A DNA stretch of 64,000 nucleotides, taken from positions 6,076,001-6,140,000 of the forward strand of contig NW_026889805.1 in the NCBI RefSeq assembly GCF_033153115.1, read 5' to 3'. The stretch's first letter is position 1, and each line of letters starts with the position of its first letter. Below, piece by piece: positions 34,444 to 59,900 of this stretch. A program made the position numbers and the translations under genes. The notes beneath the pieces are model-generated. The model saw only the letters and a program-made list of their open reading frames with translations, did no database searches and was not told the origin of the DNA. The stretch comes from Saccostrea echinata (taxonomy: Eukaryota).

Positions 34444-35653
34444 ATGGACTTGGTCGATCCATCTGCATCAAAAGAGGAGGCAATGCAGGCTTTACACTAC
34501 TGCACAAGAATGGAGTACTTCGACATTGTAGACGCAATATTGAAGACTCATTTTGGAACAACGAAGCTTTCGGATCTTTCTAGTCAATGTATGGAACTTT
34601 TAACAAATGTCGTGAAGTCTGGTTCGCTTGAATCGCTAGAGATGATTCTAGACCATGTGGATGAGAATTTCCTAGCAACCCCGCTAACTCAACGAACCTT
34701 CGTGACAAAACTACTCACAACTGCCATCACGAATGGGAAGGATGTGGTCTGTGGTACTCTAATTAAGAGGGGCGGAGACCCCAATGGACAAATTAACGGT
34801 ACGACATTCCTACATGCTGCTGTAGCACAGGGTCAGGAGAATCTGATGAAAGCGCTTGTCGAGGGTGGTGCTGACATTTCCTTGAAAAACAAAAGAGGAG
34901 AAACCATCATTTTTCCAGTTATAATGTCTGATATCTTCAATAAGGTAAGATATTTATATCTGACTGTTATATGAGCTTTTGATGCTTTCTTGGTGTATGA
35001 AAGTAGACTTTGAAATAATAAAACTCTTGCTGTTTCAGGCTGACTTGGTAAGTTGGTTAGTTGCTCGAGGAGTGGATCCTAAAGACACGGGTATCAGTGG
35101 AAAACAGCCCATACATGTGGCAGCGGCCCACTCCTCTGACGTTATTTCACGTCTTGTTGATTTGGGGTGTGACGTCAACCAAACAGACGTTATCCACAAA
35201 GATACACCCTTACACATAGCTTGCTGTCGGTGCAACGGAGAAACAATTGAAACTTTAATCAAATGTGGGGCAAAATTTAATCTTGTGAACAACGAAGGAG
35301 AAACGCCACTCACAAAGTTACTGAAATTCGCTACAGACGCCGTTAATTTTCACTCAAAGTCAAGGATGAATTTAGCCAGACAGTTAATGAAATATGGATT
35401 TATTAGCAAGCAAAGCAAGCTTTGGAAAAATGTAAAACAGAAAGTTGGGAGAAACAAGGTTCAGGAGCTGTATAAAAGACTTCGATTGGAGAACAAGACA
35501 GTTTCCAGCCTCCAGCACCTGTCCAGACTAGTCATCAGTGATAATATCAAACCTGTCAGTGTTCGGAAGGCAGTCCATACCCTAGCTATACCTCCTCACC
35601 TTAAGGACTATCTCATGTTTTCTGATTTCACGTTTGGAACAAATTTTTCTTAA
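34444..35653 (+). CDS. Ankyrin repeat and SOCS box-containing protein (ASB-like), 2 coding exons, ~371 aa
   Basis: Exons 34444-34944 and 35039-35653, joined by a phase-0 GT-AG intron. Ankyrin motifs: GTTFLHAAV, GKQPIHVAA, DTPLHIAC, GETPL. C-terminal SOCS box: SLQHLSRLVI...LAIPPHLKDYL. An acceptor (ttttcag, ~34432) just before the ATG suggests a 5'UTR exon, with a candidate donor at ~33265. Confidence 0.88.
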
Positions 35654-46000: not shown

Positions 46001-47926
46001 ATGAGTACAGAGGATAGAGTCAGGAAATAGATAAAAAGTAGAAGCATATGATATTTGTTTCTGAGTTGATAATTTTTTGATGATTGATGTTCATGATTTA
46101 TTGGAGAATAATGTCCTCAGCATTTCTTTGATCTCAACAATATAACTGTAGTAGAATAGAAGACAAAGCTTTAAGGCATATAGGGAAACATATATATCTA
46201 AAAATCTTCTCAAAAGCAACAGGTCCACAATTAGTCAAATTATATGGAAGTTCTAATGTCCCATGGATTCACGTTTGCTTACATCATGGTCCTTGGGACT
46301 TGGGTTGAACAACAACAGGAATAAAAATTAAATTTTACATTGGATTTTATGTAGAAATCTTAACAAATGTCCTTCTACAGAACAGCAAGGTATAAACAGT
46401 CAAACTTATATAATAGCAGGGTTTGACACTGGTAGCCCACTAACCCAATACAATGAAAATTGAAGTCGGTCTACTAAACTAGTATGTTTGCTCTACAGAA
46501 CTAATGACATTTGATATACATGTACATGTACCACACAGTCACTGAAAGCAGTTGTAAAGACTTATTCAAGAAATTAATAGCATATTCTGAATTTTTTGTG
46601 AGTTTAAAATACTGTTTGAATTGTTGCTGTCAAATGAGACTGTCAAACTTTGTTATGGCCTTACTTATTGTTTTCATCCAATCTATCAGTAAATCTTGCT
46701 TGCATCTTCATCATTTAAGTGTTTGAAACTAATTTCTTAGAACAAAGGATAAAAGAGGACACTGCAATTATCTGGGGTAAATGTCTCATGATTGGTTACA
46801 GAGGAGGCCAGGACAGAGTGCGATTCTGGGAAATGTCACCACATCTGTGTAACATCTCCTACTGGAGCCACCTGTAAATGCAATCCTGGATTCCATAAAC
46901 TGAAGAACCACACATGCATAGGTACTGTGTATGAAATTTGTAATTGTATTAAAGAAAACCACAGCTAAAGATTCAATCTGCTACTGTTTATTTTAATTGA
47001 AAGAAAAGTGTTTCAAATAATGTGCTCATTATGACAGCAAGTTTTGCCCTCTCCACTTTTTTAAAGAATATGAGACTTTATAATTCATCAAATGTTATAA
47101 TTAAAAAAAAAAAAATAAGAAATCACTTAGTATATAAATTCTGCTTGCAATATCATAAGATATGCAGTACAAAGTATAGTGTTACAGATACTGATGAATG
47201 TGAGGACAATGAACCACCATTGTGCAGTCATGTATGTCGGAACACTCCTGGTGGTTACGCATGCTCCTGTTACCATGGTTACAGGCTCACAGACGAAGGG
47301 AAGTGCAGGGTTGAAGGTAAAAATCTGATATGCTTATCTTAAAGGGTATTTATCATGTTTCTGATGTTTTTTTAAAATTGAATATATTTATATTCTTGTT
47401 ACATATTATTATCATTTTATCATTTAATAGCATGAAAAAGTCATAATTAGGAGAGGAAAAAAATGCCAAAAATTAAGAGTCCTTGCAGTAAAAATCTTCA
47501 CTAATTAGATAGCATGTCTAAATGACAGTAAAATGTCATTTGTCAATTCTTAAGACTAAATGCATCAAACAGATCTGGCATTAAACAATTTCCTATACAG
47601 TATGGATAGTGGAAACTGTAACATTGAGGATAATTCTTTGGCAATGGTCATGTGTCCATCAGTCTGTCTGTCTGTAAACAATTTTCAAAACACTACTCCT
47701 CCAACAGTTTAATTTCAATATAACTTGATACATAAGTAGATTACACTAAGATACATAATTCTGTGTATCAGTTTTTTGATTTCAATGAACAGTGTTGTCA
47801 TGGTTACTAAAAATAGAGATTTCTTGGAAATACTTTCAAAACCCTACTCCTCTTACAGTTTTAGTCTGATTTCAGTATAACTTGGCACACAAGTAGACTA
47901 CACAAGATACAATAATTCTCTATCAA

Positions 47927-47973
<47 letters not shown>

Positions 47974-50900
47974 CGTCGTCCGTCTGTAAACTTAGTGGAA
48001 TTTTTCTATGGAGAATTATTTTTCACCAACAACCAGAAATATTTTTTAACATAACAACTGGACCAAGCGATTTTAATTTTCTAGCAAAAAATTTTATTAA
48101 TAAAATTATGATTTAATTTAGCATCTTTACTTTTTATATCAAAATTTTTTGAAATATTGTGATAAAAATCATTTAAGTTTATAAAACTAATTTAATTACT
48201 GTAAACCAACTATTATTCATGATTTGTTAGCCATAATTGATCCTTGACTATTTATTTTCCCAATCAAGGAAACATTCTTTATAAATACAGAATTAAATAC
48301 TTAGTGATTGGTTTGCCATTGGAGATATTTATGAATAGAAGAAGGTTTCAATGCTTGCAGATATTTCTCAGATGTAAATAAAAGCTGCTTTACAGTTGTC
48401 AATAGTTTTAAATTTTAAAGAAAATTTATGTACAAGTACTTTTTGTTCATCAATGAACAGCTGTGTATTTCATCTTGTTTCATTAGTTATGTTAATGTCA
48501 GCTTTATTATATCCAGGATCTCCTCCTGTCTTTCTACTGGCTCATGATGGTGAAATCCGTGGGTATGAAGTGTTTCAGAATAGATCATTACCTGTCCTCA
48601 CAGAAGATGCTAAATTGTATGCAAAAGATCAAGATGACATCAAAAGTATGGGTGAGTCAGTATTTTTATGTGAAGTGTCAGAGTACATTTTGCCCGAAAT
48701 TCATAAAAAATTTATACATGTGAAAAAAAAGTTCAAAAACACCAAGTGAATTAATTCCTTTAATTTCAATAATGTTTTTTTTCATTTGTTAGCTTTAGGA
48801 CCAAATCAGGTGCTGTATTTCAGTGACACGGGTCATCAGAAGATTTATTCCTCTGACTTGAATGGGGACTGGAAGGCACACAAACATGAAGTTATTAACA
48901 TGGGTAGGACTATATTGCATCAGATTTTAGGACCTACTCAGCAGGTGCCCTATAGTGATCAGTCTGTCTATCCATTCCTCTGTCCATCCTATTTCATTTG
49001 TTCAGAGTATATCGATCATCTCTTCTTTGGCTCAGTCAAGCTCAAACTTCACCCATAGAATGCATGTGGGTAGAGGCTATGCAGTGATTTCTAGATCAAA
49101 TGTCAAGATCAAAAAACAGATATATCTCTTTGTAAATTCCTTGTCTGGAGCATTTTTCCCCTTGACCCAGTTGGGTTCATACATCACCCATAGAGTACCT
49201 GTGGTTAGAGGTTGTGTTGACCTTGAAACAGTTTTCAAGGTCCAAGGTCAAGATAAAAATCTCTTTTTGTAAATCCTTATCTAGAGCCTATTTTCTCTCC
49301 CTTTGGCCCTTTGCTCAAACTCCACTCATAGATTGCCTGTGGGTAGAGGATGTAACGGAGTGTCCTTGAGCCAAGTTTCTAGGTAAGTGTTCAAGAGCTG
49401 CACCTCCTTAATCTCTTAAGAATATAATAGCTATAATGTTTACCTACATACAGGGACCTGTCTTGATGATGAATTTACAACTCATCAATAACTCGACGAT
49501 CTTTAACCACAGAAAATAAAACTAGGCTTAAGATAGAAAGAAATAAGATACTGAACAAGAGGAATATAATTCAATGTGTTAATTTTCTCTATATGTGCAC
49601 TCTGACTCAATAGATCTGAAATCACGAAACTGTTAATAATAATATTTAAATTTATATATTTAAAGGTCAACACATACAAGTGAAAAAATTACATGTTTAT
49701 ATTTGCACAGATTCGGAAACCAAAAATTAAGTTCCATAGAGAAAATATGAAAAATTGTACAAATTTTCATTTAGTGGACCTAATAAGCTCTTTAAAAGAG
49801 CAAGAACAAAATAGTGTAATGGGATAAATGCTTCATTTTTGTGTATTGAAAAAAAACAAGTCATAACTACACTTAGTTATACAGAGGAAGTAGAGCCATC
49901 ACTGAAATCAAGAAATGAAGCAATGATTTTTTTTCCAGGCCTGAAGAACCCTGAGGGAATTGAAGTGGACTGGACTACTGGACATCTGTATGTAGCGGAC
50001 AGTGGTAGGGGGGAAATTTTGGCCTGTCTGGGGGACGGGGAGATGTGCACTAGTGTGGTATCTTACATTCATCATCCCAAAGCTCTAGTTATTGACCAGA
50101 AAAACAGGTAAAGGAATGTATTTATTTCATATCAAAGAATTGCTTCCTATGTTTGATTATTTTGGAATTTTTAATTTTACTTAAACTCATTACTTTACTA
50201 ATATTTTTTAAAACCCACAATACTCTTATTATTTCATATTGTCTATGGCACTTATTTTATTGACATCATAATTTGGACACAAAACTTAAGTAATTAAGAC
50301 CTGATTATAACCATTTACATATGATAGCAGGGCTTTGAAACTTTTTCTTTATCATGAAATATTGTTGAGAGCAGAAGAAAGTCATAAAAAGCAGAAGTAC
50401 TTTTATTTCAAAATTCAATGGTTTCAAACACATTTGTTTGTCGAATGTTATACTAGATGTTATACTGGACTGCTGTCTGTTTTCTGCTGCTTCCTGTGTC
50501 CCTATCTTAGTGGGGATTAGGGACTTTTCTTTCGTCTATTTCCTTCATAGCTTCTTCCATTTCATCCTCATTTTCTTGGTCATATTCCCCACTATCTTCA
50601 GGGCTATACTGGCACCACTTTGGACACTTCTTTCCCAGGCAGAGCAGTATGGATATTTTATTTACAAAATGGTGGCAGTTGTTTGTGTAGAAACCGTAAT
50701 TGCCAAACTTGTCTACATAGTGTTTGATGCAGCTTTTGATACAACCCCTACTTAGTCTTGTGTAACCTGCTGGACGTTTTTCTTTTGTCATGGTACACAC
50801 ATTGCCGAGGTTTGGGTAGTCGTATTTAACAAGAGCAGCATCACGTCCAACACGGTTTCCAAATTCTAGGTACATACCATCAATATAGATCCAACGATGG

Positions 50901-53900
50901 GAGAACTTAAAAGTAAATCTGCTTGGAGGTGTGCGACGATCTCGATTAATTCGTCTGACTCCAAAGTTCATGCAGGCTAAGTCAGTTTCTCCAAAATAAT
51001 ATGGCATTGTATCCTCTGTAAGCAAATTAGCATATTGAGAATTCACAGTTTGCCTAATTCATGTTACTGTATAAAAATATACTTTATTTTTAATCCAAAA
51101 AACAAAGGAGAATTTTCAAAGATTATAAATGTTTTTGTAATCATTGTAGCAATTATTTCTACTTTTTATAATTTGGCATACAAGAAAACTGTAAGGATTG
51201 TACACAGGTCACCTGTGTGACTCAGGTTAACTTTTGCTATCCCTTTTCATCCTTGGTCTTCTTTTCTCAATTTTGACTTATCCAAAAGATTGGGTCCTCA
51301 CTTTTTTTAAAATTTATGTTTAGCTAAGTTTCAAAGAAATTATTCAAGATATTTTTATCAAACTTCATATGCTGACCCATACTGATAAAGCTATTCAAAT
51401 GCATCAACATTTTATGACCTTTACTTTTCCTTTGACCTTGACCTCACTTTTCTTAAATTTGTATTTAGCTCAGTTTCAAAAAACTATTCAAGATCTTTTT
51501 TATGTAAGCTTAAGCACTGATGCATAATTTGGTGAGAATTTTTCAACTGTGTCCAATTTTTTTTTTTACCTTGACTTTCCCAATGACCTTTGACTTTACT
51601 ATTTATTGTGTATATAACTCAGTTTTAAACAAAGTATTCAAGATATTTTCATCAAACTTCTTACAACAATCAAAAAACTAATATATTGCAATATCATTTC
51701 ACTAAAGCAGAAGAGTATCAAGTTTATAATATGGCATTTTCCACAATATATCCTCTAGCTTTACTTACTTCTCTTGGGACATGCTCGGCTGTTTCCTCGT
51801 GTTGGATAAACCCCAAAGATAGCACTTTCAGTGATAGAAGTGGTTATATAAACAAGAACCACTGTTATAAAGACCTGCCAATAATAGAAAAATACTTACT
51901 TTCTACCAAATAAAAACAGACCTCTTTAATGGCAAAGAGTTTGATAACCTTGTATGACCGACGATTAGCTAGGGGGTGTCCACAATGTGGCTTGAACCTA
52001 CAACCCTCAGATTAAAATCCAACGCTCTACTGCCTGGGTTAAAGGGTTATCCCACTAGCTAGTGCTAGTAGGAGTGTGGCCTCACTATTTACAATACATA
52101 GCCACGTTTTTAATTCTGTTACATTTGTATCTCTTTTCCCTTAAGGTGTTTCCCCTTAGAAAAATACATCGTTTTTGAAAAAAGAGTAAAAGATGTAAAA
52201 GAGTAAAAAAAGAAAGGTCTGGGAATTTTTACTGAATTAGGTTAAAAATTAGGATTTTTAGGAAGTAGTAGTTATTTTGTTGTAATGTATTTATCCCTAA
52301 CTTTTCTGAAATAATACCTTTTTTTTTATCTTTACTTTGCATCAATAATAGGTAATGTTACTATTGAATTGGTTTTTCAAAGCAATCTTTAAAATGTGAA
52401 AAATTTTCACTTTTGTTTATTGAACATGTATAGGTTGAATTGAAAAAAAAAATAGTGAAAAACAGTAGAAAAAATAGAATCTTTAAGATTAACAATTTTC
52501 ATTGAAATTTAAAGACTGAATATGATGAATGTTTTACTTAATTTTTAAAGGAAAGACCACAGCTGTGTTTAATATAGTATTCTTGTTTTGTTTAGTTTTT
52601 TTTTTTTTTCAAACAAGAACAGAAGAGATTTTTTTCAGTTTAATATATTATAATTCTACCACTTACCCTCATAGTAGTCTCTGTCGTGTTTTATCCTGGT
52701 CCGTGTTTTATCCTTGTCTGTCAGAGACAGTCTAATGGAGGACTGCTTACTCATTAGATGAAATATTCGGAGTCTCTTAATTTGAATTCAGACAGATGAT
52801 TATCTGTTACATATGGCTTTTTATGGGGCCATCTGATGTAAACATTTGGTGGGAGTGAAGTGAAAATGGACACTGTGTCGGTGCATTGCATATCCTGGGG
52901 TACACTTTAGCTCGATAGGATATCAACATTTATGCTTCATTTAGGTACAATAATGTTGCAATTCCAGAAATATTTTTAAAGTGACAGTTATATTGCAGAA
53001 ATTGTGATACACTTCTAATATTTGAAGCACTGATTTTTATGCCCCCATATCGAAGAGTTGGGTGTATATAGTTTTTGCCCTGTCCGTCCGTCTGTCTGTT
53101 TGTCTGCAAAAAAATTAACATTGCCCATAACTTTTTGATTGGTAAGAGCTATGGCTTTCATATTTCACATGTGTATTCCTTGTGACAAGACCTTTCTTTT
53201 AGTACCATCATATTTGACCTTTTGACCGTGACCTTGGAGTTTGACCCAGTTTTGCAAAATTTTACCGAACTTTAACCTTGGCCATAACTTTTGAATAATT
53301 GGTGCTAGGGCTTTCATACTTCACATGTGTAATCCTTGTGGCAAAACCTTCCTTTGGATTCCAACAACTTTGACCCTTTGACCTTGACCTAGAACTTGGA
53401 CCTACTTTTGAAAAACTTTAACGCCATATATTTTGAACAGTTTGTGCTAGGGCTTTCAGATTTAGTATTTCTATTCCTTGTGACAAGACCTTCCTTTGGA
53501 TACCAACAATAGTAATCCATTGACCTTGACCCTGGAGTTTGACCTACTTCTGAAAAACTTTAACCTTGGCCATAACTTTTGAATGGTTGGTGCTACGGCT
53601 TTCGTATTTCACATGTGTATTTCTTGTGAGAATTCCTTTCCTTGAGCACTATTTATTTTGACCATTTGACATTGAACTTGATGTTTGAGTTCTTTTGTTA
53701 AACTTTAACCATTTCCATATCTATTCAATGGTTGCTGCTTTGGCTTCTATATTTCACAGGTATATTTCTTAAGACAAGACCTTACTTTGGGTACCAACAT
53801 ATATTGATTGCATTTGAGAAAGGTTAACCTTTGCTATAAGTTGCCATACGGTGGCATCAGTGTTTTACAAACACATCTTGTTTCCAATATATTCTGGTGT

Positions 53901-56900
53901 CTCACAGGCAATTAATTTTTTTTCCTTGAACACTCTAGTAAATAAGGTAGCATGGCCATTTATTTTAACATGTGCCACATTTTGTTGAAACAGTTTGTCA
54001 AAAATACCATATGTCTTAGGCAATATTTTCTCAAAATTTCAATAAAGTATAATTAAAAAAATCAAACTAATTTTGCAATATTTATTTCATTATTCATTCC
54101 ATATGAATATGAGACACAAGTTGTAGACAGTACTTGATACAGCTGACATATGCCTCACTCTCAGGAATCTCACATTGTTATAGAATTCTTCTCATACACC
54201 ATTGAGGACAAATTACTGCTTCACACATGACTTTGGAAATTTTGTTTACAAAATGGTGACAGTTGTTTGTGTACACATGGTAGTTGCCATATTTCTCGGT
54301 ATAGTTTTCCACACATCCTATGACACACTCAAGACTCAGTCTACTGAAGCCAGCAGGCTGTGGCTCAATCTTCAAGGGACAGACATCACCAAGATTTGGA
54401 TGGTCAAATTTAATTTTTGCTGCATCCTTCCCTATTCTGTTGCCAAACTCCAAGTATGTTCCTGCATAGTAGATCCATCGGTGAGTGGGGTTGAAAGTGA
54501 ATCGACTGGGTGCATTTCTCCGCATTATTGGAGTTTTTCTGTGTAAACCATACCTCATACACATGAGGTCAGTTGTACCAAAATAATAAGGAATGGAGCC
54601 AGCTGTGGAAATCAATAAAAGTTTCATATGAGAATTGCAGATAGAACTTTAAAAAAATTTATACATTTTTTGCCTTGCCATGCATGAGGCAGAGGCATTT
54701 ATGGCCACTTGAATCCATCGGATTTGACCCTGGATTCAGTGGACTGGAGTGGATACACTGGAAAATCATAGTCTCACTGATGAACATTTATAATCCCTTT
54801 ATTTTTTAAAAAGAATTTCTGGACCTTGCTCCCTCAAGATTTCATATATCAACAGACATCTCCATCCATTCCCCCTCCACTGAGGTGCCTCTGGATCCAC
54901 CTCTTATTTTTGATGCTATATTTATAAAGTATAACACATTAATTTTGGAAGAACAAGAAATGAGTGAATTTAGTAAGAAAATGACTTACGGACAGGAGGG
55001 CAGTGTGAAGCATCTCCTCTTGGTAGACCAAACAGTATTCCATAAGACTGAGTGACCCATGATAAAATGCCAAGGCTGACTACTGTCTAAAAAGGAAAAG
55101 TATTGGGTATAATGTCATCTCTGTGAATGTAATTTAAATTCAAGACATGTGGTCCCTCTTGATCTATCAAAGGTTAAAGGTTAGAATCAGTTATGACATA
55201 GATCCATTATAGGCAGTAAAAAGAATATTGCTGTAGTCTGTTTCTTTTAAAAAACAATAAATGAAACTTGTATATTGTAAAGTGGTGAAAACTGAAACAG
55301 AATATAACTTTTTTTATTTATCATATCTCCAAATGCTATTAAATATGTACAGCTTTAATTCCTAGCTGTATTTCCTTTAATGATTTAATCAATTGACAAT
55401 CACATGATAGTATCACTAGCATTACCTAAACTCCCTGGACATTATAATTTGCTGAACACCAAAAAATAAGAGTTCTAAACACTTTCATGGGGGTAAAAGT
55501 GATTTACAGAGAGTTAAGGAGAAAGAATTATTACAATACATTAGTGAATTTTTTTTCTTGGCATATCTTACTGAACATAAGAAAAAATTGCTGTAGTGAC
55601 CTTCCTGTTCAGCAGGAGCCAGTAACCCATGAAGAGAAAGTGGGGATCCTTTAACTAGATAAAAGAACCCCCTCCTAAACCTTGAAAAAGAATTACAAGA
55701 GAAACAAAAGCACAGAAAATATCTTTATACCTGAAGGTATAATGGTAAATATTTCCTTTTTAAACCACAAAACATGACAAAAGTAGATGAAAAATTGTTA
55801 ATTTCATAAATAATCGTGTAAAAAATGACTTACTATGATTTTCGGTTGCATTGCTGCATGGAGATAGTGATTCAGATAGAATAAGACAATCAGACATCTA
55901 AGGTTAATAAAAAGGAAGCATTCAATCAGTACCTGGTTTATTTGCAAGCTTCTTTAAATTGCTGGAGGTGAATTTGTACATATGTTTCTTTAAGTTCTTA
56001 TTTCATGAAGAAAGTGATAAGATCTATTTTAGTCTATAAACAGAGGGGTTGAAGACATTTATTTGTCACATGCAAGAAACATTTTGTTGAAACTAAAGTT
56101 GTGATGTGTCACTAATGATACCGTTAGTTCTGGCAGATGTGAACTAAATTTATATGACATACTTTAAAATGAACAGAAATATATGGTTTTTGAAATTTCA
56201 GATGGTTTAGAATATACTTTGTCACCCTGTAAAATCATTTCACAATCATACATCAATTACTTTAATACATTTTGCAAAAGCAGAAAATAGTTATAATTAG
56301 AACACTTAGTTTTAGTATTTATGGTCATTTTAAATTTTGACATAATTTGATGTAAAAGTGTTTTCTTAAAGTGTTGTCCAAGCCCATCTCTAGCTATTTG
56401 ATTAATTAATTTTTTTTTTTTGGGGGGGGGGGGGCATATATTTATCCAGAAAGAGTGAAATACTTTGGAGATTACTGTAGGTTATTTTCAAATCTTTATG
56501 ATAATAATAACCATGTTAAGTATATACAGTTGAACTTTGGTATCTTGAACACTGATATCTCGGAATACCATGGATGTGTCGAAGTGATTTGGAAGTCCCA
56601 ACCCCTTATTCTTTAAGTATTTTACCCCGGATGTCTCGAATCCTCAGATATCTTGAAGTTTTTTCTTGGTCCCATTGGGTTCGAGATAACAAGGTTTGAT
56701 TGTAGCTCCAGTTATTCTTTGAATAAGAGGTGCTATCTATGGTGAATTCACCATGCAGCTTTTTTTCCTTTGCTGCCAGAATATGGCTGAAATACTGCCA
56801 TCTCGGTATTAATTAAACAACAAATAATCATCCTATTCCTTTGTAAATCAGTAGCATCTTCATTTCTGTATTGAGGATAATTATGTAATTGGTGACTAAT

Positions 56901-59900
56901 CAGTTGTTAAACAAGTAAATTGATTAATATACTAACTGATGCAAAAACCTCATTGATAATCTACTATTATTATTCAGCTATGAACATTGATGTAAATAAT
57001 ATCTCTATCCTGTTTTGTAGACAACTCTACTGGTCTGATGTTGAAGACCCTCCCAAGATAAAGAGGGCCAATCTGGATGGCAGTGGGACAGTGACCTTTC
57101 TTTCTGACCATGTAGGATACGCTAGTGTAATGATCCTGGACTACATATCAGAGCGCCTGTTCTGGGTGGACAAGCTATCCCCCAAACTGGAGAGTGTCCA
57201 TTTAGATGGCTCAAACAGACAGGTCTGATGCTCTTAATTGGTATATTACAAAAAGAGTATTAATTGGGAAATATAATCTGTATAATAAATGTAGATTTTG
57301 TTTTTTCTCAGGCTAAGACTCCTTGGTGATACATGTAAGAACAGATTTGATCTGTCCCAGTGTTATGCTCTTGGCTTATATGTACAGATCTGTTTGAAGT
57401 GAAGCTCTCTTGCATCCTAAGGCCTCAGAATATTTCAACCAAAAAGTAGGTCACATTGACCTACTTTTTGAATTTCATGGCTATAATTAAATATATCAGA
57501 TACTTATTAATATAGAATCATCAAAGTTTGTCAGTTGATGCATTTTGAGCCCTCAAAGTGTGTCAATCAAAAAGCAAGTCACAGTGACCTACTTTTTAAA
57601 TTTCATGGCTATATTTATATATTTCAGATAGAAATTGGCTAAGAATCATCAAACTAAGTTAAAACTAAATATTTCAAATAATGAGAATCGGTGAATCATT
57701 AAGCTTTTTTTTGCCCCTGCCATGAAATGGCCAGGTACAGAGTGTTACCCTGTTTTGTCATTCTGTCATTCCGTCATCATTCACTTTCCGCTCATTGTAT
57801 ATGCAACAGTTGCACACATTTAACTCAAATTTGGATGGATATGTCATAGGAATAAGCAGGTCAAGTTCAATTTGGTCATGGTCCAATGATTTTGACAGAA
57901 TTATCCCTCTTGAACTTAGAAAAAAGAAGAAAATTTTCAGTTTCTGCTCACTAACTTTTGTAGGGATGTATGTATAAGGTTGAAATTACATATGCAGGTA
58001 TTTTATCAGAAAATACAGTTTAATTTTGAATTTAGTCATGGTCCGATGATTTTTGACAGAGTTATCCCTCTTGAACCTTGAAAAAAATGAGAAATTTTCA
58101 GTTTCCGCTCTCTAACTTTAATGTAGGGATGTATGTATAAGGTTGAAATTGCATATGAAGGTATTTTATCAGAAAATACGGGTCAAGTTTGAATACAAAT
58201 TTAAAACTAAATATTGTATTTGAAATTTTGCCTGCTTGCGGGGGTATTTGTGGCGTTATAATGACACATCTAGTTTAGTTAATGCATCTTGGGTCCTTGG
58301 AGTATTTCAACCAAAGAATGGGTCACAGTGACCTTCTTTTGGAATTTTAAGGCAGTATCTAAATATTTTGGATAAAAAGAGGCGTAGAATCACTAAACTT
58401 TGTCAGTTGATGCATCTTGGATCATTGGAGACTATATCATTCAGCCAAAATGTTGGTCACAATAACCTACTCTTTGAATTTTATGGCTATATTAAATTAT
58501 TTCAGATACTAGTTGGCTTACTATCATCAAAACTCTAGAGTCACAGAGTAAGGAGGTGATCCTTACATAATGGGTTTGAATCCACTGTGGGACATGGAGA
58601 CCAGTCCTTCAGATGAGATTGTATAAACCGAGGTCCTGTGTTCCAGTAGGTGTAAGCACGAAAAAGATCCCTCATTGCTCAATGGCCCTGAGTGCCAAGC
58701 ATAGGTTAAAATTGAGTAACCAGTTACTTTTCCAATTGAGTACCCAGTTTTCCTCATAGTTTCCATATCAATAATTTATCTCATCCTCTACTTATTGGTG
58801 GATATAAAACACAAATGTACTGTATATGAACTTTGCCAGTTGATGCATCTTAAGTTCTTAGTTTGTGTGTTAACCAAAAATTAGGACATGGTGACCTAAT
58901 TTTTGAATTTCAAGGCTTTATCTAAATGTATAGGATACAAAGAGGCTTAAAATAGAAGTGATAGATCAGCAATTCAAGGGATTTGGGCCTCTTGTATGTG
59001 TATGTGCCTTGTGACTTATTTGTACAGATTTTGTCTATTTGCAGTGTAGGCCTGTTGGCTTATATGTACAGATTTTGCCTACTCCCAGTGTAGATCTCCT
59101 AGCTTGTATGTACACATTTGACTATTAAATGAACTTAGTGTACAGGGTTGTATTTACAGATTTTGCCTGTTTACAATCTAAGGAACCCAGTCAGTATAGC
59201 TGTGTTTGAAGACAGAATTTACTGGACTGACCTTGGCTGGCGTGCACTCTTTTCTGCAAATAAGTTCACAGGCCATGACATTCAGCATGAAATCTCTGGT
59301 CTACAAGGACATGCTGTTATACTGGTTATGCATCCAGCTCTTCAGAATTCAAATCTTATTAGTAAGTGAGTTTACCTTATCAGTTTTCATGCCCAACCAT
59401 GAATATGGACAGGGAATATAATATTTGTCATATCCGTCCTTCTAATCTGTTCTTTCACCTGTCCATCTGTAACATTTTGTCCTTAGTTCACTTTCAAAGA
59501 AACTGTTCAAGATAGTTAAGCAAAAATTCATACACTGATTTACAGTAAAACTTGTCTATTCCAGATGTTGTGTATTGTGAAATTTTGCCGTTTATGATGT
59601 ATGTAAATTTAAAGACCCTTTCATTGAATTCAGTTGTTTAAAATGTTGTTTAATTTGGAATTTTTCTATTCTATGGAACCATCGATGTTGGGATTAGACA
59701 AGTTTCACTGTATATATATTGATAAGAGCTATTCAACTGTTGATATTATATTACCTTGACCTTCCTTATGACCTTGACCTCATTGTTTCTTATTTTGCAT
59801 TAAGTAGGGTTAAAAAGAAGCTATGCATAATATTTTATCAAAGCTCATACAATGATATATATAATGGTGTGGACTATTCAACTGTCATAATTTTCTGAAG

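What the first reader, a model, noticed from the sequence alone, without database searches (positions are those of the whole stretch)
50507..55851. Nested antisense pair of apparently secreted PPPDE/LRAT-like (permuted NlpC/P60) proteins inside the lipoprotein-receptor gene
Seen: two paralogs with the same 3-exon structure and intron phases, hydrophobic signal-like N-termini that appear only after splicing, and conserved HRWIY..G.YLEFG followed ~70 aa later by Y..YTNNCHHF. Established: a His-before-Cys order with NCxHF is the signature of permuted papain-like PPPDE/DeSI peptidases and LRAT/HRASLS acyltransferases, whose characterised members act intracellularly. Both mature proteins have nine aligned Cys, consistent with four disulfides plus one free catalytic Cys. 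Inference: an extracellular isopeptidase, acyltransferase or lipase family, with possible roles in shell matrix, defence or egg/lipoprotein processing. Any functional link to the host receptor is conjecture.
Basis: partly seen in the sequence, partly recalled or inferred. Interest (0 to 1): 0.78.

Follow-up and report, generated by a model that had tools for sequence, protein, structure and literature searches.

The report
Secreted PPPDE-like cysteine enzyme gene pair
Two neighbouring oyster genes, sitting backwards inside an intron of a lipoprotein-receptor-type gene, encode small signal-peptide-bearing, disulfide-rich relatives of the PPPDE/DeSI cysteine enzymes, part of an unstudied animal family whose substrate is unknown.

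Summary
Two minus-strand, three-exon paralogues (57% identical) lie in one 6.9-kb intron of a plus-strand EGF/YWTD (LDL-receptor class B) gene. They equal the NCBI models LOC133173302 and LOC133173467 of Saccostrea echinata, both "uncharacterized". Spliced contigs from public runs show both are expressed.

The PPPDE/LRAT reading is largely supported by sequence. The two proteins stay below Pfam's cut-offs. However, 49 of 64 relatives hit Peptidase_C97 at E<=0.01 and 4 of 34 scanned singly pass its cut-off. A family profile finds DeSI-1/PPPDE structures (E 0.002). The published His-Tyr-Cys triad maps to H77/Y144/C151, conserved in 62, 62 and 59 of 64.

- A furin-type RxKR site sits 12 residues before the catalytic His (47 of 64).
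- Cysteine co-variation indicates C151 is unpaired.
- The family spans cnidarian, annelid, brachiopod, bivalves and amphioxus, and is expanded in this genome.

CLN5 is a luminal precedent for this fold, so "all known members are intracellular" is overstated. Verdict: a new variant of a known kind, of moderate interest.

The parts
50507..51015 (-). Gene A (LOC133173302, P0009) exon 3. It holds codons 38(part)-206 plus the stop, the whole PPPDE-like domain and the acidic tail.
   Evidence: ORF. tblastn maps P0009 38-206 here. Contigs of 4 runs end at 51015 at the splice joint.
50400..50506 (-). Gene A 3' UTR, a minimum extent. The contigs run to the edge of the laid stretch.
   Evidence: table 8: X2 record 9 and X3 record 16 start at 50400.
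51769..51874 (-). Gene A exon 2. It encodes the signal-like hydrophobic segment and Cys34.
   Evidence: tblastn. Acceptor cag|GTC and donor AGAA|GTAAGT. Joint 51015->51769 in 4 of 4 runs. The contig alignment stops at 51872.
52667..52707 (-). Gene A exon 1, a minimum extent. It holds the 5' UTR plus ATG AGG (ATG at 52672-52670), with the donor GTAAGT after 52667.
   Evidence: Sequence context. 41 further letters of X2 record 9 and 40 of X4 record 24 fall in bin 52644-52830 by depth arithmetic. This is an inference; the joint row was not printed.
50897..50899 (-). Gene A codon His77, the proposed catalytic His.
   Evidence: Read. H in 62 of 64 relatives.
50675..50677 (-). Gene A codon Cys151 (NNCHHF), the proposed nucleophile.
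   Evidence: Read. C in 59 of 64. It aligns to Cys108 of chain 2wp7_A.
50933..50944 (-). Gene A codons 62-65 (R-D-R-R), a furin-type site 12 residues before His77.
   Evidence: [KR]x[KR]R in 47 of 64 and R65 in 60 of 64.
54178..54602 (-). Gene B (LOC133173467, P0001) exon 3. It holds the PPPDE-like domain plus the stop.
   Evidence: ORF. tblastn 100% over residues 36-175. X1 record 8 covers 54133-54602. Acceptor cacag|CT.
54133..54177 (-). Gene B 3' UTR, a minimum extent.
   Evidence: X1 record 8.
54990..55086 (-). Gene B exon 2. It encodes the signal-like segment and Cys31.
   Evidence: tblastn. Acceptor tttag|ACA and donor GTCC|GTAAGT. 52 further letters of X1 record 8 fall in bin 54888-55074 (an inference from depth).
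54481..54483 (-). Gene B codon His75.
   Evidence: Read. Alignment.
54259..54261 (-). Gene B codon Cys149 (NNCHHF).
   Evidence: Read. Alignment.
55834..55851 (-). It would add six residues before exon 2.
   Evidence: Sequence. It resembles the N-terminus of the C. virginica orthologue P0004. No RNA coverage.
56796..56801 (-). Alternative gene B exon 1 that fits the NCBI model's first two residues: ATGGCA|GTATTT, with a weak donor.
   Evidence: Pattern search, the only ATGGCNGT on the minus strand between 55090 and 60000. It lies outside the stretch laid.
49839..50108 (+). Host-gene exon, a blade of a YWTD propeller. It ends ...ALVIDQKN + AG|gtaaag. The exon's 5' end was not determined; 49839 is the ORF start.
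57021..57228 (+). The next host-gene exon. It starts ag|A CAA CTC TAC TGG (R-QLYWSD) and completes the same YWTD repeat. The 3' end was not determined.
   Evidence: Ldl_recept_b at E 9.1e-9. Context.

Best explanation
**What it is.** Two expressed tandem paralogues lie antisense in a 6.9-kb intron (50109-57020) of an LDL-receptor-family gene. Each encodes a small secretory-pathway protein.

**Order of parts in each protein:**
1. A short cleavable signal peptide.
2. A conserved strand motif, PYYFG-x-TDL-x-C.
3. A basic loop ending in a dibasic/furin-type site (RDRR in gene A, MRR in gene B).
4. Twelve residues later, a PPPDE (MEROPS C97)-like circularly permuted papain domain.

**Proposed active site (P0009 numbering).** It is His77 (HRWIY), Tyr144 and Cys151 (NNCHHF). 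Glu88 is a possible fourth residue. The other eight Cys form four disulfides.

**Proposed mechanism, inferred.** After signal-peptide removal and convertase cleavage the protein is a two-chain, disulfide-linked enzyme. Cys151, activated by His77, forms an acyl-thioester intermediate. The enzyme hydrolyses or transfers an acyl group (thioester, ester or amide/isopeptide bond) on a substrate outside the cytosol. This is the chemistry PPPDE1/2 and CLN5 show on palmitoyl-thioester probes.

**What is shown and what is inferred.**
- Shown: gene structure, expression, paralogy, family conservation, and sequence kinship to PPPDE.
- Inferred: fold, secretion, processing, catalysis and substrate.
- No link to the host gene is indicated.
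For: **Gene models and expression:**

**Kinship to PPPDE:**
- Pfam Peptidase_C97 is the best hit for both proteins, at E 3.7e-4 and 8e-3.
- 49 of 64 relatives hit it at E<=0.01, with a best E of 2.3e-8.
- 4 of 34 proteins scanned singly exceed the 29.2-bit cut-off: P0010 33.0, P0012 31.6, P0019 34.5, P0026 29.4.
- The 64-sequence profile finds only 2wp7_A and 3ebq_A in the PDB, at E 0.0024 and 0.0032.
- hhalign against this genome's own canonical PPPDE Cys-exons gives probabilities of 82% and 55%. CLN5 exons used as contrast give under 1%.

**Triad:**
- Chain residues Y101 and C108 of 2wp7_A align to Y144 and C151.
- The published triad is His38-Tyr101-Cys108 (PMC9012467).
- HMMER coordinates place the family His at PF05903 position 35 (P0021 residue 64, P0032 residue 65). 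That is where I place the canonical oyster DeSI-like His.
- Conservation is H77 62/64, Y144 62/64, C151 59/64 and E88 63/64.

**Secretory route:**
- 41 of 51 relatives with complete N-termini have a hydrophobic N-terminal segment.
- The h-region is only 13-16 uncharged residues, and there is no later hydrophobic stretch.
- UniProt labels one M. gigas relative "Secreted protein".
- [KR]x[KR]R occurs in 47 of 64.

**Free Cys151:**
- C129, C133, C163 and C172 appear and disappear together.
- The five relatives lacking C151 keep the other cysteines.
Against: - Both window proteins fall below Pfam's curated cut-offs: 20.4-20.8 and 15.7-16.5 bits against 29.2 for C97, and 15.9-16.3 against 24.3 for LRAT.
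- Single-sequence and 8-sequence searches of the PDB found nothing relevant.
- hhalign of the family against the canonical His-exon failed, at probability 0.5%. So the His assignment rests on sub-threshold HMMER coordinates, spacing and conservation.
- No structure could be predicted. The fold, the His-Cys distance and the disulfide map are therefore untested.
- No trained signal-peptide predictor was available.
- Gene B has only a dibasic MRR, not the full RxKR.
- The runs are only guessed to be RNA.
- Nothing bears on substrate or location.
Confidence: 0.7

Rival explanations
1. This is a luminal organelle enzyme, lysosomal or granule-resident like CLN5, and is not released outside the cell. 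The domain and chemistry would be the same, but the site of action would be inside the endomembrane system.
For: - CLN5 is a soluble lysosomal glycoprotein with the PPPDE fold, two disulfides and four N-glycans (PMC9012467).
- The protein-language-model search lists CLN5 clusters at 0.90 for both P0009 and P0008.
- A signal peptide only shows entry into the ER.
Against: - P0009 has no N-x-S/T sequon and P0001 has one. Mannose-6-phosphate sorting is therefore unlikely for gene A.
- Neither protein has a C-terminal ER-retention motif.
- The CLN5 Pfam model matches only the canonical CLN5 locus in this genome, 4 of 4 matches there.
- hhalign to the CLN5 exons gives under 1%.
- The Atlas score is in the range that chance reaches 4-10 times in 100.
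Confidence: 0.17
2. This is a non-catalytic protein on a PPPDE scaffold, such as a structural, shell-matrix or binding protein. Gene A's acidic tail could bind calcium or mineral.
For: - Gene A and its orthologues carry a 34-residue tail with 12-14 acidic residues.
- Five of 64 relatives have lost Cys151, replaced by G, V, Y, S and S. Non-catalytic members therefore exist.
Against: - His, Tyr and Cys are kept in 62, 62 and 59 of 64 relatives across phyla, and in both window genes.
- Gene B lacks the acidic tail.
- No paper in the library joins LRAT with shell matrix (0 papers).
- None of the six accession and locus names searched appears in any paper (0 papers).
Confidence: 0.08
3. This is a prohormone- or toxin-like precursor. 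The convertase site would release the roughly 30-residue N-terminal peptide (PYYFG..C..) as the active product, and the C-terminal domain would be a carrier.
For: The layout is signal peptide, then a short conserved peptide, then RxKR.
Against: - The N-terminal piece has one or two conserved Cys (C52 in 60 of 64) and needs partners in the C-terminal chain for the parity seen.
- The C-terminal domain is the best-conserved part and carries the triad.
Confidence: 0.04
4. The likeness to PPPDE is a chance motif match, and the fold is unrelated.
For: - The window proteins are below the cut-offs.
- The matches cover mostly the C-terminal half.
- The His-exon comparison failed.
Against: - 49 of 64 relatives hit the same family.
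- 4 of 34 pass the curated cut-off.
- The only PDB hits are the two PPPDE structures.
- The Tyr-x6-Cys spacing is identical.
- The weak secondary hits (LRAT 10 of 64, RTE1 7 of 64) are of the same permuted cluster. The RTE1 assignment to that cluster is recalled.
Confidence: 0.03

Closest known systems
PPPDE / DeSI-1 and DeSI-2 (Pfam PF05903 Peptidase_C97; PDB 2wp7, 3ebq)
   Same: - It is the best and only significant sequence kin.
- The order is His before Cys.
- The Tyr-x6-Cys spacing is identical.
- Gly lies 13 residues after the His in both.
- The motif around the Cys is N-C-x-x-F.
   Different: - PPPDE proteins are cytosolic or nuclear and have no signal peptide; this is recalled, apart from what PMC10318531 says of their function.
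- Features present only here are a signal-like N-terminus, 4 putative disulfides, a PYYFG strand motif, a convertase site before the His, and His directly after the Cys (H152 in 60 of 64).
- The window proteins do not reach the Pfam cut-off.
CLN5 (Pfam PF15014), a lysosomal Cys-based thioesterase. The Atlas cluster name calls it bis(monoacylglycero)phosphate synthase.
   Same: - It works in the secretory/endolysosomal lumen.
- It has the PPPDE-type His-Tyr-Cys centre and is disulfide-stabilised (PMC9012467).
- It is the nearest named family in the language-model search, at 0.90.
   Different: - There is no detectable sequence kinship.
- CLN5 is about twice as long, with an extra C-terminal domain, and is heavily N-glycosylated.
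- CLN5 is made soluble by SPP/SPPL cleavage of a membrane precursor, not by a furin-type site.
LRAT / PLAAT (HRASLS) acyltransferases-phospholipases (Pfam PF04970)
   Same: - The fold is permuted NlpC/P60, with an NCxHF-type Cys motif.
- There are weak hits in 10 of 64 relatives, and one (P0074, 24.5 bits) is just over the cut-off.
- UniProt tags three relatives "LRAT domain-containing protein".
   Different: - LRAT-family enzymes are membrane-anchored and face the cytosol; this is recalled.
- No hydrophobic anchor occurs after residue 30.
- Glu stands where LRAT has a second His; the position is recalled.
- Scores are lower than for C97.
Secreted classical NlpC/P60 hydrolases, such as bacterial cell-wall endopeptidases and the tick Tae2-like effector named in PMC10318531
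   Same: They are extracellular members of the same superfamily with Cys-His chemistry.
   Different: - Their topology is non-permuted (Cys before His).
- No Pfam hit to PF00877 appeared in any scan.

Membership tests
PPPDE / Peptidase_C97 (PF05903) | Score at or above Pfam's gathering cut-off (29.2 bits). | tested here: not met
   Gene A scores 20.4-20.8 bits and gene B 15.7-16.5 bits. Of 34 family proteins scanned singly, 4 pass: P0010, P0012, P0019 and P0026. P0010 is 70% identical to gene A.
PPPDE / Peptidase_C97 (PF05903) | His-Tyr-Cys catalytic centre in permuted order (His38, Tyr101, Cys108 in PMC9012467). | tested here: met
   Y144 and C151 align to Y101 and C108 of 2wp7_A. The His maps to profile position 35 by HMMER coordinates, the same position as the canonical oyster exon by my count. 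Conservation is 62, 62 and 59 of 64. The His mapping rests on sub-threshold matches.
PPPDE / Peptidase_C97 (PF05903) | Circularly permuted papain fold. | not testable with these tools
The Atlas holds no model of P0009 or P0008.
LRAT / PLAAT (PF04970) | Score at or above the gathering cut-off (24.3 bits). | tested here: not met
   Gene B scores 15.9-16.3 bits. Gene A has no hit at E<=1. One of 34 relatives, P0074, reaches 24.5 bits.
LRAT / PLAAT (PF04970) | C-terminal or N-terminal membrane anchor (a recalled feature). | tested here: not met
   The best 19-residue hydropathy after residue 30 is 0.64 (P0009) and 0.74 (P0001).
CLN5 (PF15014) | Match to the family model. | tested here: not met
   The model matches only the canonical locus at C56:17.24 Mb, 4 of 4 matches. 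There was no CLN5 hit among 64 members at E<=0.01. hhalign probabilities are 0.08% and 0.15%.
Secreted proteins (classical route) | Cleavable N-terminal signal peptide. | tested here: inconclusive
   Only heuristics were available. There is an uncharged run of 14-15 residues at the N-terminus, small residues before the likely cut (TES|A, SYG|I), and no later hydrophobic segment. 41 of 51 relatives share it. No SignalP-type tool was available.
Proprotein-convertase substrates | R-x-K/R-R motif in an exposed loop. | tested here: met
   Gene A has RDRR; gene B has only MRR. [KR]x[KR]R occurs in 47 of 64 and [KR]R in 57 of 64. The P1 Arg is present in 60 of 64. Cleavage itself is untested.

The most novel reading that the evidence does not exclude
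An ancient metazoan family of extracellular, zymogen-like PPPDE enzymes. It is present from a soft coral to amphioxus and expanded in bivalves. No vertebrate or arthropod appeared among the 20 clusters whose names I looked up, a sample too small to show absence. A proprotein convertase would cut 12 residues before the catalytic His, giving a two-chain, disulfide-linked cysteine acyl-hydrolase or transacylase. This enzyme would act on lipids, lipoproteins or acylated microbial surface molecules outside the cell. It would be an extracellular counterpart of CLN5 and the PLAAT enzymes, possibly used in defence or digestion.
Probability: 0.3. Interest if true: 0.72.

Novelty: new variant of a known kind. 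Interest (0 to 1): 0.5.

Why it matters
PPPDE/DeSI enzymes are poorly understood. PMC9012467 reports that their deSUMOylase activity is weak and that they and CLN5 are efficient thioesterases on probes.

A branch built for the secretory pathway, with a convertase site next to the active site, would widen where this chemistry is known to be used. It would also give a compact, disulfide-stabilised model enzyme.

For oyster biology, a tandemly expanded secreted enzyme family is a candidate for immunity, digestion or surface chemistry. This genome shows 46 exon-level matches.

I found no paper on it. The nesting in the receptor gene's intron is an ordinary arrangement.

Tried and rejected
**Searches that found nothing relevant**
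- Single-protein and 8-sequence profile searches of PDB sequences found nothing relevant. Only the 64-sequence profile reached PPPDE.
- hhalign of the family against the canonical His-containing PPPDE exon failed, at probability 0.5%. It paired EEFFFGGT with the family's PYYFGTT instead.
- CLN5 membership is rejected.
- Viral relatives suggested by the Atlas (two Nucleocytoviricota clusters at 0.91) were not confirmed. With A1, 98 pattern matches in IMG/VR gave no tblastn relative.
- No tRNA or tRNA-like gene lies in 50400-57100.

**Literature**
- PPPDE with signal peptide or secreted: nothing pertinent (listing only).
- Six accession and locus names: 0 papers.
- PPPDE plus oyster: 4 papers, none on this family by title or abstract.
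- Permuted papain plus signal peptide: 8 papers, none on an animal secreted family (listing only).
- LRAT plus shell matrix: 0 papers.
- Searches were too loosely framed to be informative.
- Supplementary tables of shell, haemolymph or egg proteomes were closed. A listing of these proteins there cannot be excluded.

- Earlier notes of the scan concern QTRT1 repeats elsewhere in the window and did not bear on this finding.
Exons were searched by reference. The full-length proteins used are the public models returned.

Full report
**1. What is in the sequence**

On the minus strand there are two long ORFs, at 50507-51046 and 54178-54627. They are 57% identical (78 of 138 residues, E 4e-62). Both contain HRWIY..YLEFGN and, 74 residues later, [13 protein letters not shown].

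A word-based protein search with the second ORF returned 9 proteins, all from oysters or unnamed assemblies. Two of them are NCBI models of Saccostrea echinata:
- LOC133173467 (P0001, 175 aa; 100% identity).
- LOC133173302 (P0009, 206 aa).

Both are named "uncharacterized protein". tblastn of these two models on the window maps them exon by exon.

Exons were handled by reference. The full-length sequences used later are these public models.

**2. Gene models**

Gene A, from the sequence itself:
- Exon 1 ends ...CTACT ATG AGG|GTAAGT. The ATG is at 52672-52670, the exon ends at 52667, and the intron phase is 0.
- Exon 2 is 51874-51769 (cag|GTC ... AGA A|GTAAGT, phase 1).
- Exon 3 is 51015-50507.

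Gene B:
- Exon 2 is 55086-54990 (tttag|ACA ... GTC C|GTAAGT, phase 1).
- Exon 3 is 54602-54178.
- Exon 1 is unresolved. The NCBI model's first two residues fit only ATGGCA|GTATTT at 56801-56796.

**3. Expression**

The run search returned six runs, guessed rather than recorded as RNA, from two studies. I laid four of them on 50400-56000.
- The joint 51015->51769 (CT..AC on plus, which is GT..AG on minus) is present in contigs of 4 of 4 runs.
- X2 record 9 (781 nt) and X4 record 24 (646 nt) cover exon 3 and exon 2 of gene A with 0-1 differing letters per piece.
- The same two contigs carry 41 and 40 further letters. The depth in bin 52644-52830 (3.83 and 1.24) is exactly what those letters would give there. 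That supports exon 1, but it is arithmetic, not a printed joint.
- X1 record 8 (522 nt) covers 54133-54602 of gene B plus 52 letters. The depth of bin 54888-55074 (7.97) places those letters in exon 2.
- Intron bins have no depth apart from repeats.

So both genes are transcribed and spliced. Gene B's first exon was not seen.

**4. The host gene**

Plus-strand ORFs around the pair hit several families:
- EGF_CA: 47022-47342, E 3.5e-7.
- Ldl_recept_b: 56920-57228, E 9.1e-9, and 59148-59369, E 7.5e-6.
- NHL, a weak hit: 49839-50111.

The exon ending ...[10 protein letters not shown]|gtaaag at 50108 and the exon starting ag|A-CAA-CTC-TAC-TGG (R-QLYWSD) at 57021 form the two halves of one YWTD repeat. 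The 6.9-kb gap between them is therefore one intron of one gene, and both small genes lie inside it, antisense. Nothing suggests a functional link.

**5. The family**

A profile of 8 oyster sequences (A1) was run against 1.84 billion cluster representatives. It found:
- 116 clusters at E<=1e-3.
- 71 clusters at E<=1e-10.
- 16 clusters at E<=1e-30.

I aligned 64 of them as A2. I left out fragments under about 120 aa, two very long multi-domain hits, and three sequences that look like translated bisulfite reads.

The consensus reads: signal-like N-terminus, PYYFGTTxLxC, RxKR, xxPxR, HRxIYYxGxxFEFG, C, ExxPAGYSxLSxxCxxxCxxxYxxxxGxYxLLxNNCHHFANRxSxxLCxxxxCPxWC.

Conservation in P0009 numbering:

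| Residue | Conserved in |
|---|---|
| H77 | 62/64 |
| E88 | 63/64 |
| C111 | 64/64 |
| Y144 | 62/64 |
| N150 | 61/64 |
| C151 | 59/64 |
| H152 | 60/64 |
| C52 | 60/64 |
| C168 | 60/64 |
| R65 | 60/64 |

I looked up names for 20 clusters. Twelve carry organism names:
- Bivalves: Tegillarca, Mizuhopecten, Ostrea, Crassostrea/Magallana, Mytilus, Dreissena.
- The annelid Owenia.
- The brachiopod Lingula.
- Amphioxus.
- The soft coral Xenia.

Eight come from unnamed assemblies. UniProt's automatic labels include "LRAT domain-containing protein" (three relatives) and "Secreted protein" (one).

In this genome the A1 profile gives 46 exon-level matches at E<=1e-3. They form clusters on contigs C47, C9, C25 and C29.

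A maximum-likelihood tree of 21 rows (43 of the 64 left out for speed) shows three things:
- Genes A and B with their oyster orthologues form one clade (97/95).
- The A type (Ostrea, Saccostrea, Magallana) has 100/99 support, so the A/B duplication predates the split of these oyster genera.
- The non-bivalve sequences fall in a separate, long-branched clade.

**6. Is it PPPDE/LRAT-like?**

The window proteins themselves stay below Pfam's curated cut-offs:
- Peptidase_C97: 20.4-20.8 bits for gene A and 15.7-16.5 bits for gene B, against 29.2.
- LRAT: 15.9-16.3 bits for gene B, against 24.3.

The family as a whole links firmly to C97:
- 49 of 64 members hit PF05903 at E<=0.01, with a best E of 2.3e-8.
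- 10 of 64 hit LRAT and 7 of 64 hit RTE1-like.
- Of 34 members scanned singly, 4 exceed the C97 cut-off: P0010 33.0, P0012 31.6, P0019 34.5 and P0026 29.4. P0010 is 70% identical to gene A.
- One member exceeds the LRAT cut-off (P0074, 24.5 bits).
- The A2 profile against all PDB sequences finds just two chains. They are 2wp7_A (E 0.0024) and 3ebq_A (E 0.0032), both PPPDE proteins.
- hhalign of A2 against the Cys-bearing exons of this genome's own canonical PPPDE genes (found, ORFs) gives probability 82% (E 1e-5, 51 columns) and 55% (E 1.2e-4).
- As a contrast, exons of the oyster's CLN5 gene give 0.08% and 0.15%.

The His-bearing canonical exon did not align (0.5%). The N-terminal half is therefore the weaker part of the case.

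**7. The active site**

PMC9012467 (abstract and passages read) gives the PPPDE catalytic centre as His38, Tyr101 and Cys108. It gives CLN5's as His166, Tyr258 and Cys280.

For Tyr and Cys:
- In the printed alignment, chain residues Y101 and C108 of 2wp7_A pair with the family's Y144 and C151. The Tyr-to-Cys spacing is the same, at 7.
- The canonical exon in L014 matches PF05903 positions 98-141 without gaps. That puts its Tyr at position 103 and its Cys at 110.
- P0001 residues 141-172 match positions 102-132, so Y142 and C149 fall on 103 and 110 to within one position.

For the His:
- HMMER's local matches start exactly at the family His and at profile position 35 in P0021 (residue 64) and P0032 (residue 65).
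- The matches of P0019 and P0018 extrapolate to the same position.
- By my count the canonical WHTGIVV His in L016 also falls on position 35. This assumes no gap in the first 11 residues.
- In both, a Gly lies 13 residues after the His.

I therefore take H77-Y144-C151 as the homologue of the PPPDE triad. The His assignment is the least secure.

**8. Secretory features**

No signal-peptide predictor was available, so this part rests on heuristics.
- P0009 starts with a basic residue, then a 15-residue uncharged stretch, then TES|A.
- P0001 has a 14-residue uncharged stretch, then SYG|I.
- Neither has another hydrophobic segment. The best 19-residue hydropathy after residue 30 is 0.64 and 0.74.
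- Among 51 aligned relatives with a complete N-terminus, 41 have such a segment.

The loop between C52 and H77 ends in a furin-type site:
- [KR]x[KR]R occurs in 47 of 64 and [KR]R in 57 of 64.
- Position 62 (P4) is R/K in 51 of 64, position 64 (P2) is K/R in 58 of 64, and position 65 (P1) is R in 60 of 64.
- Gene A has RDRR. Gene B has only MRR.

If the site is used, the mature protein is a two-chain molecule cut 12 residues before the catalytic His. That would be a plausible zymogen switch, but it is an inference.

**9. The cysteines**

Both window proteins have nine Cys, at aligned positions. Across the family:
- C129, C133, C163 and C172 come and go together. For C129 and C133, 42 sequences have both, 21 have neither and 1 is discordant. 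They look like two extra disulfides of the bivalve branch.
- The core set is an N-terminal Cys, C52, C111, C151 and C168. Many non-bivalve members have exactly five Cys after residue 20.
- The five sequences that lack C151 (G, V, Y, S, S) keep the others. One of them, P0034, has eight Cys in total.

It is indirect evidence with small numbers.

**10. Comparison with what is known**

- The nearest family by sequence is PPPDE/C97.
- LRAT/PLAAT shares the motif but scores lower, and its membrane anchor is absent here.
- CLN5 is not sequence kin. However, it is the precedent for a PPPDE-fold enzyme in the lumen of the secretory/endolysosomal system, with disulfides and N-glycans. The language-model search also ranks it as the nearest named family, at 0.90, which is a lead only.

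I found no paper on a secreted animal PPPDE-like family. The searches cover open-access full text only, and supplements were closed.

**11. Verdict**

The pair is a real, expressed, conserved gene pair. It encodes a divergent secretory-pathway branch of the PPPDE/permuted NlpC/P60 enzymes with an intact catalytic centre and a conserved convertase site.

It is a new variant of a known kind, already half-recognised by automatic annotation of relatives. Function and location are open.

Noticed in passing
window 53108-53807: A 142-bp tandem repeat, 4.7 copies at 72% match, lies between the two genes. The contigs of all four runs pile up here, with summed word depth up to about 41,000 in X1, and show many internal joints. 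It is a high-copy, apparently transcribed repeat family. A second high-depth patch lies at 51335-51521 in gene A's intron 2.
   Followed up: partly
window 52685-52718: A 17-bp unit is repeated twice at 94% match. It overlaps the inferred first exon / 5' UTR of gene A, just upstream of its ATG.
   Followed up: no
G000 contigs C47 (13.97-14.23 Mb), C9 (19.27-19.36 Mb), C25 (28.20-28.31 Mb), C29 (14.656-14.659 Mb); loci L003-L012: The family is tandemly expanded in this genome, with 46 exon-level matches at E<=1e-3. In many copies the domain is split over two exons (profile about 30-88 and 95-175), unlike the single-exon domain of the window pair. Several matches contain stop codons.
   Followed up: partly
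proteins P0007, P0071, P0096 (Logan assemblies): These predicted proteins carry Tyr, Phe, Ile or Leu where the family has His, Pro, Thr or Ala, for example NNCYYF in place of NNCHHF. That is the pattern expected from translating bisulfite-converted (C-to-T) reads, so they are likely artefacts in the public protein collection. I left them out of A2.
   Followed up: no
G000:C34:4181694-4185372 (-) and C34:6320444-6324124 (+); loci L014-L017: The canonical DeSI-like PPPDE exons occur twice on contig C34, in opposite orientation and with identical scores. This is either an inverted segmental duplication or an assembly duplicate.
   Followed up: no
protein P0012 (Tegillarca granosa, 317 aa): The public model contains three partial copies of the family's N-terminal motifs ([14 protein letters not shown]) in one protein. 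It is probably a fusion of tandem genes by the gene caller.
   Followed up: no
family alignment A2: Seven of 64 members give weak hits to Pfam RTE1-like (PF05608, best E 2.7e-4). From recall, this is the family of TMEM222, which PMC10318531 places in the same NlpC/P60-like cluster. The hits are coherent with the superfamily assignment but were not examined.
   Followed up: no
proteins P0009 and P0008: The language-model search lists two clusters of Nucleocytoviricota hypothetical proteins (172 and 178 aa) at 0.91. A pattern scan of IMG/VR with A1 found no relative. This is unexplained and may be chance.
   Followed up: partly
window 34444-35653 (+): Two adjacent long ORFs (176 and 224 aa) have repeat-like composition suggestive of ankyrin repeats. 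They were not scanned.
   Followed up: no
gene A C-terminus, window 50510-50611 (-): A 34-residue tail has 13 acidic and 3 basic residues. It is conserved in the A-type orthologues of Ostrea and Magallana and absent from gene B.
   Followed up: partly
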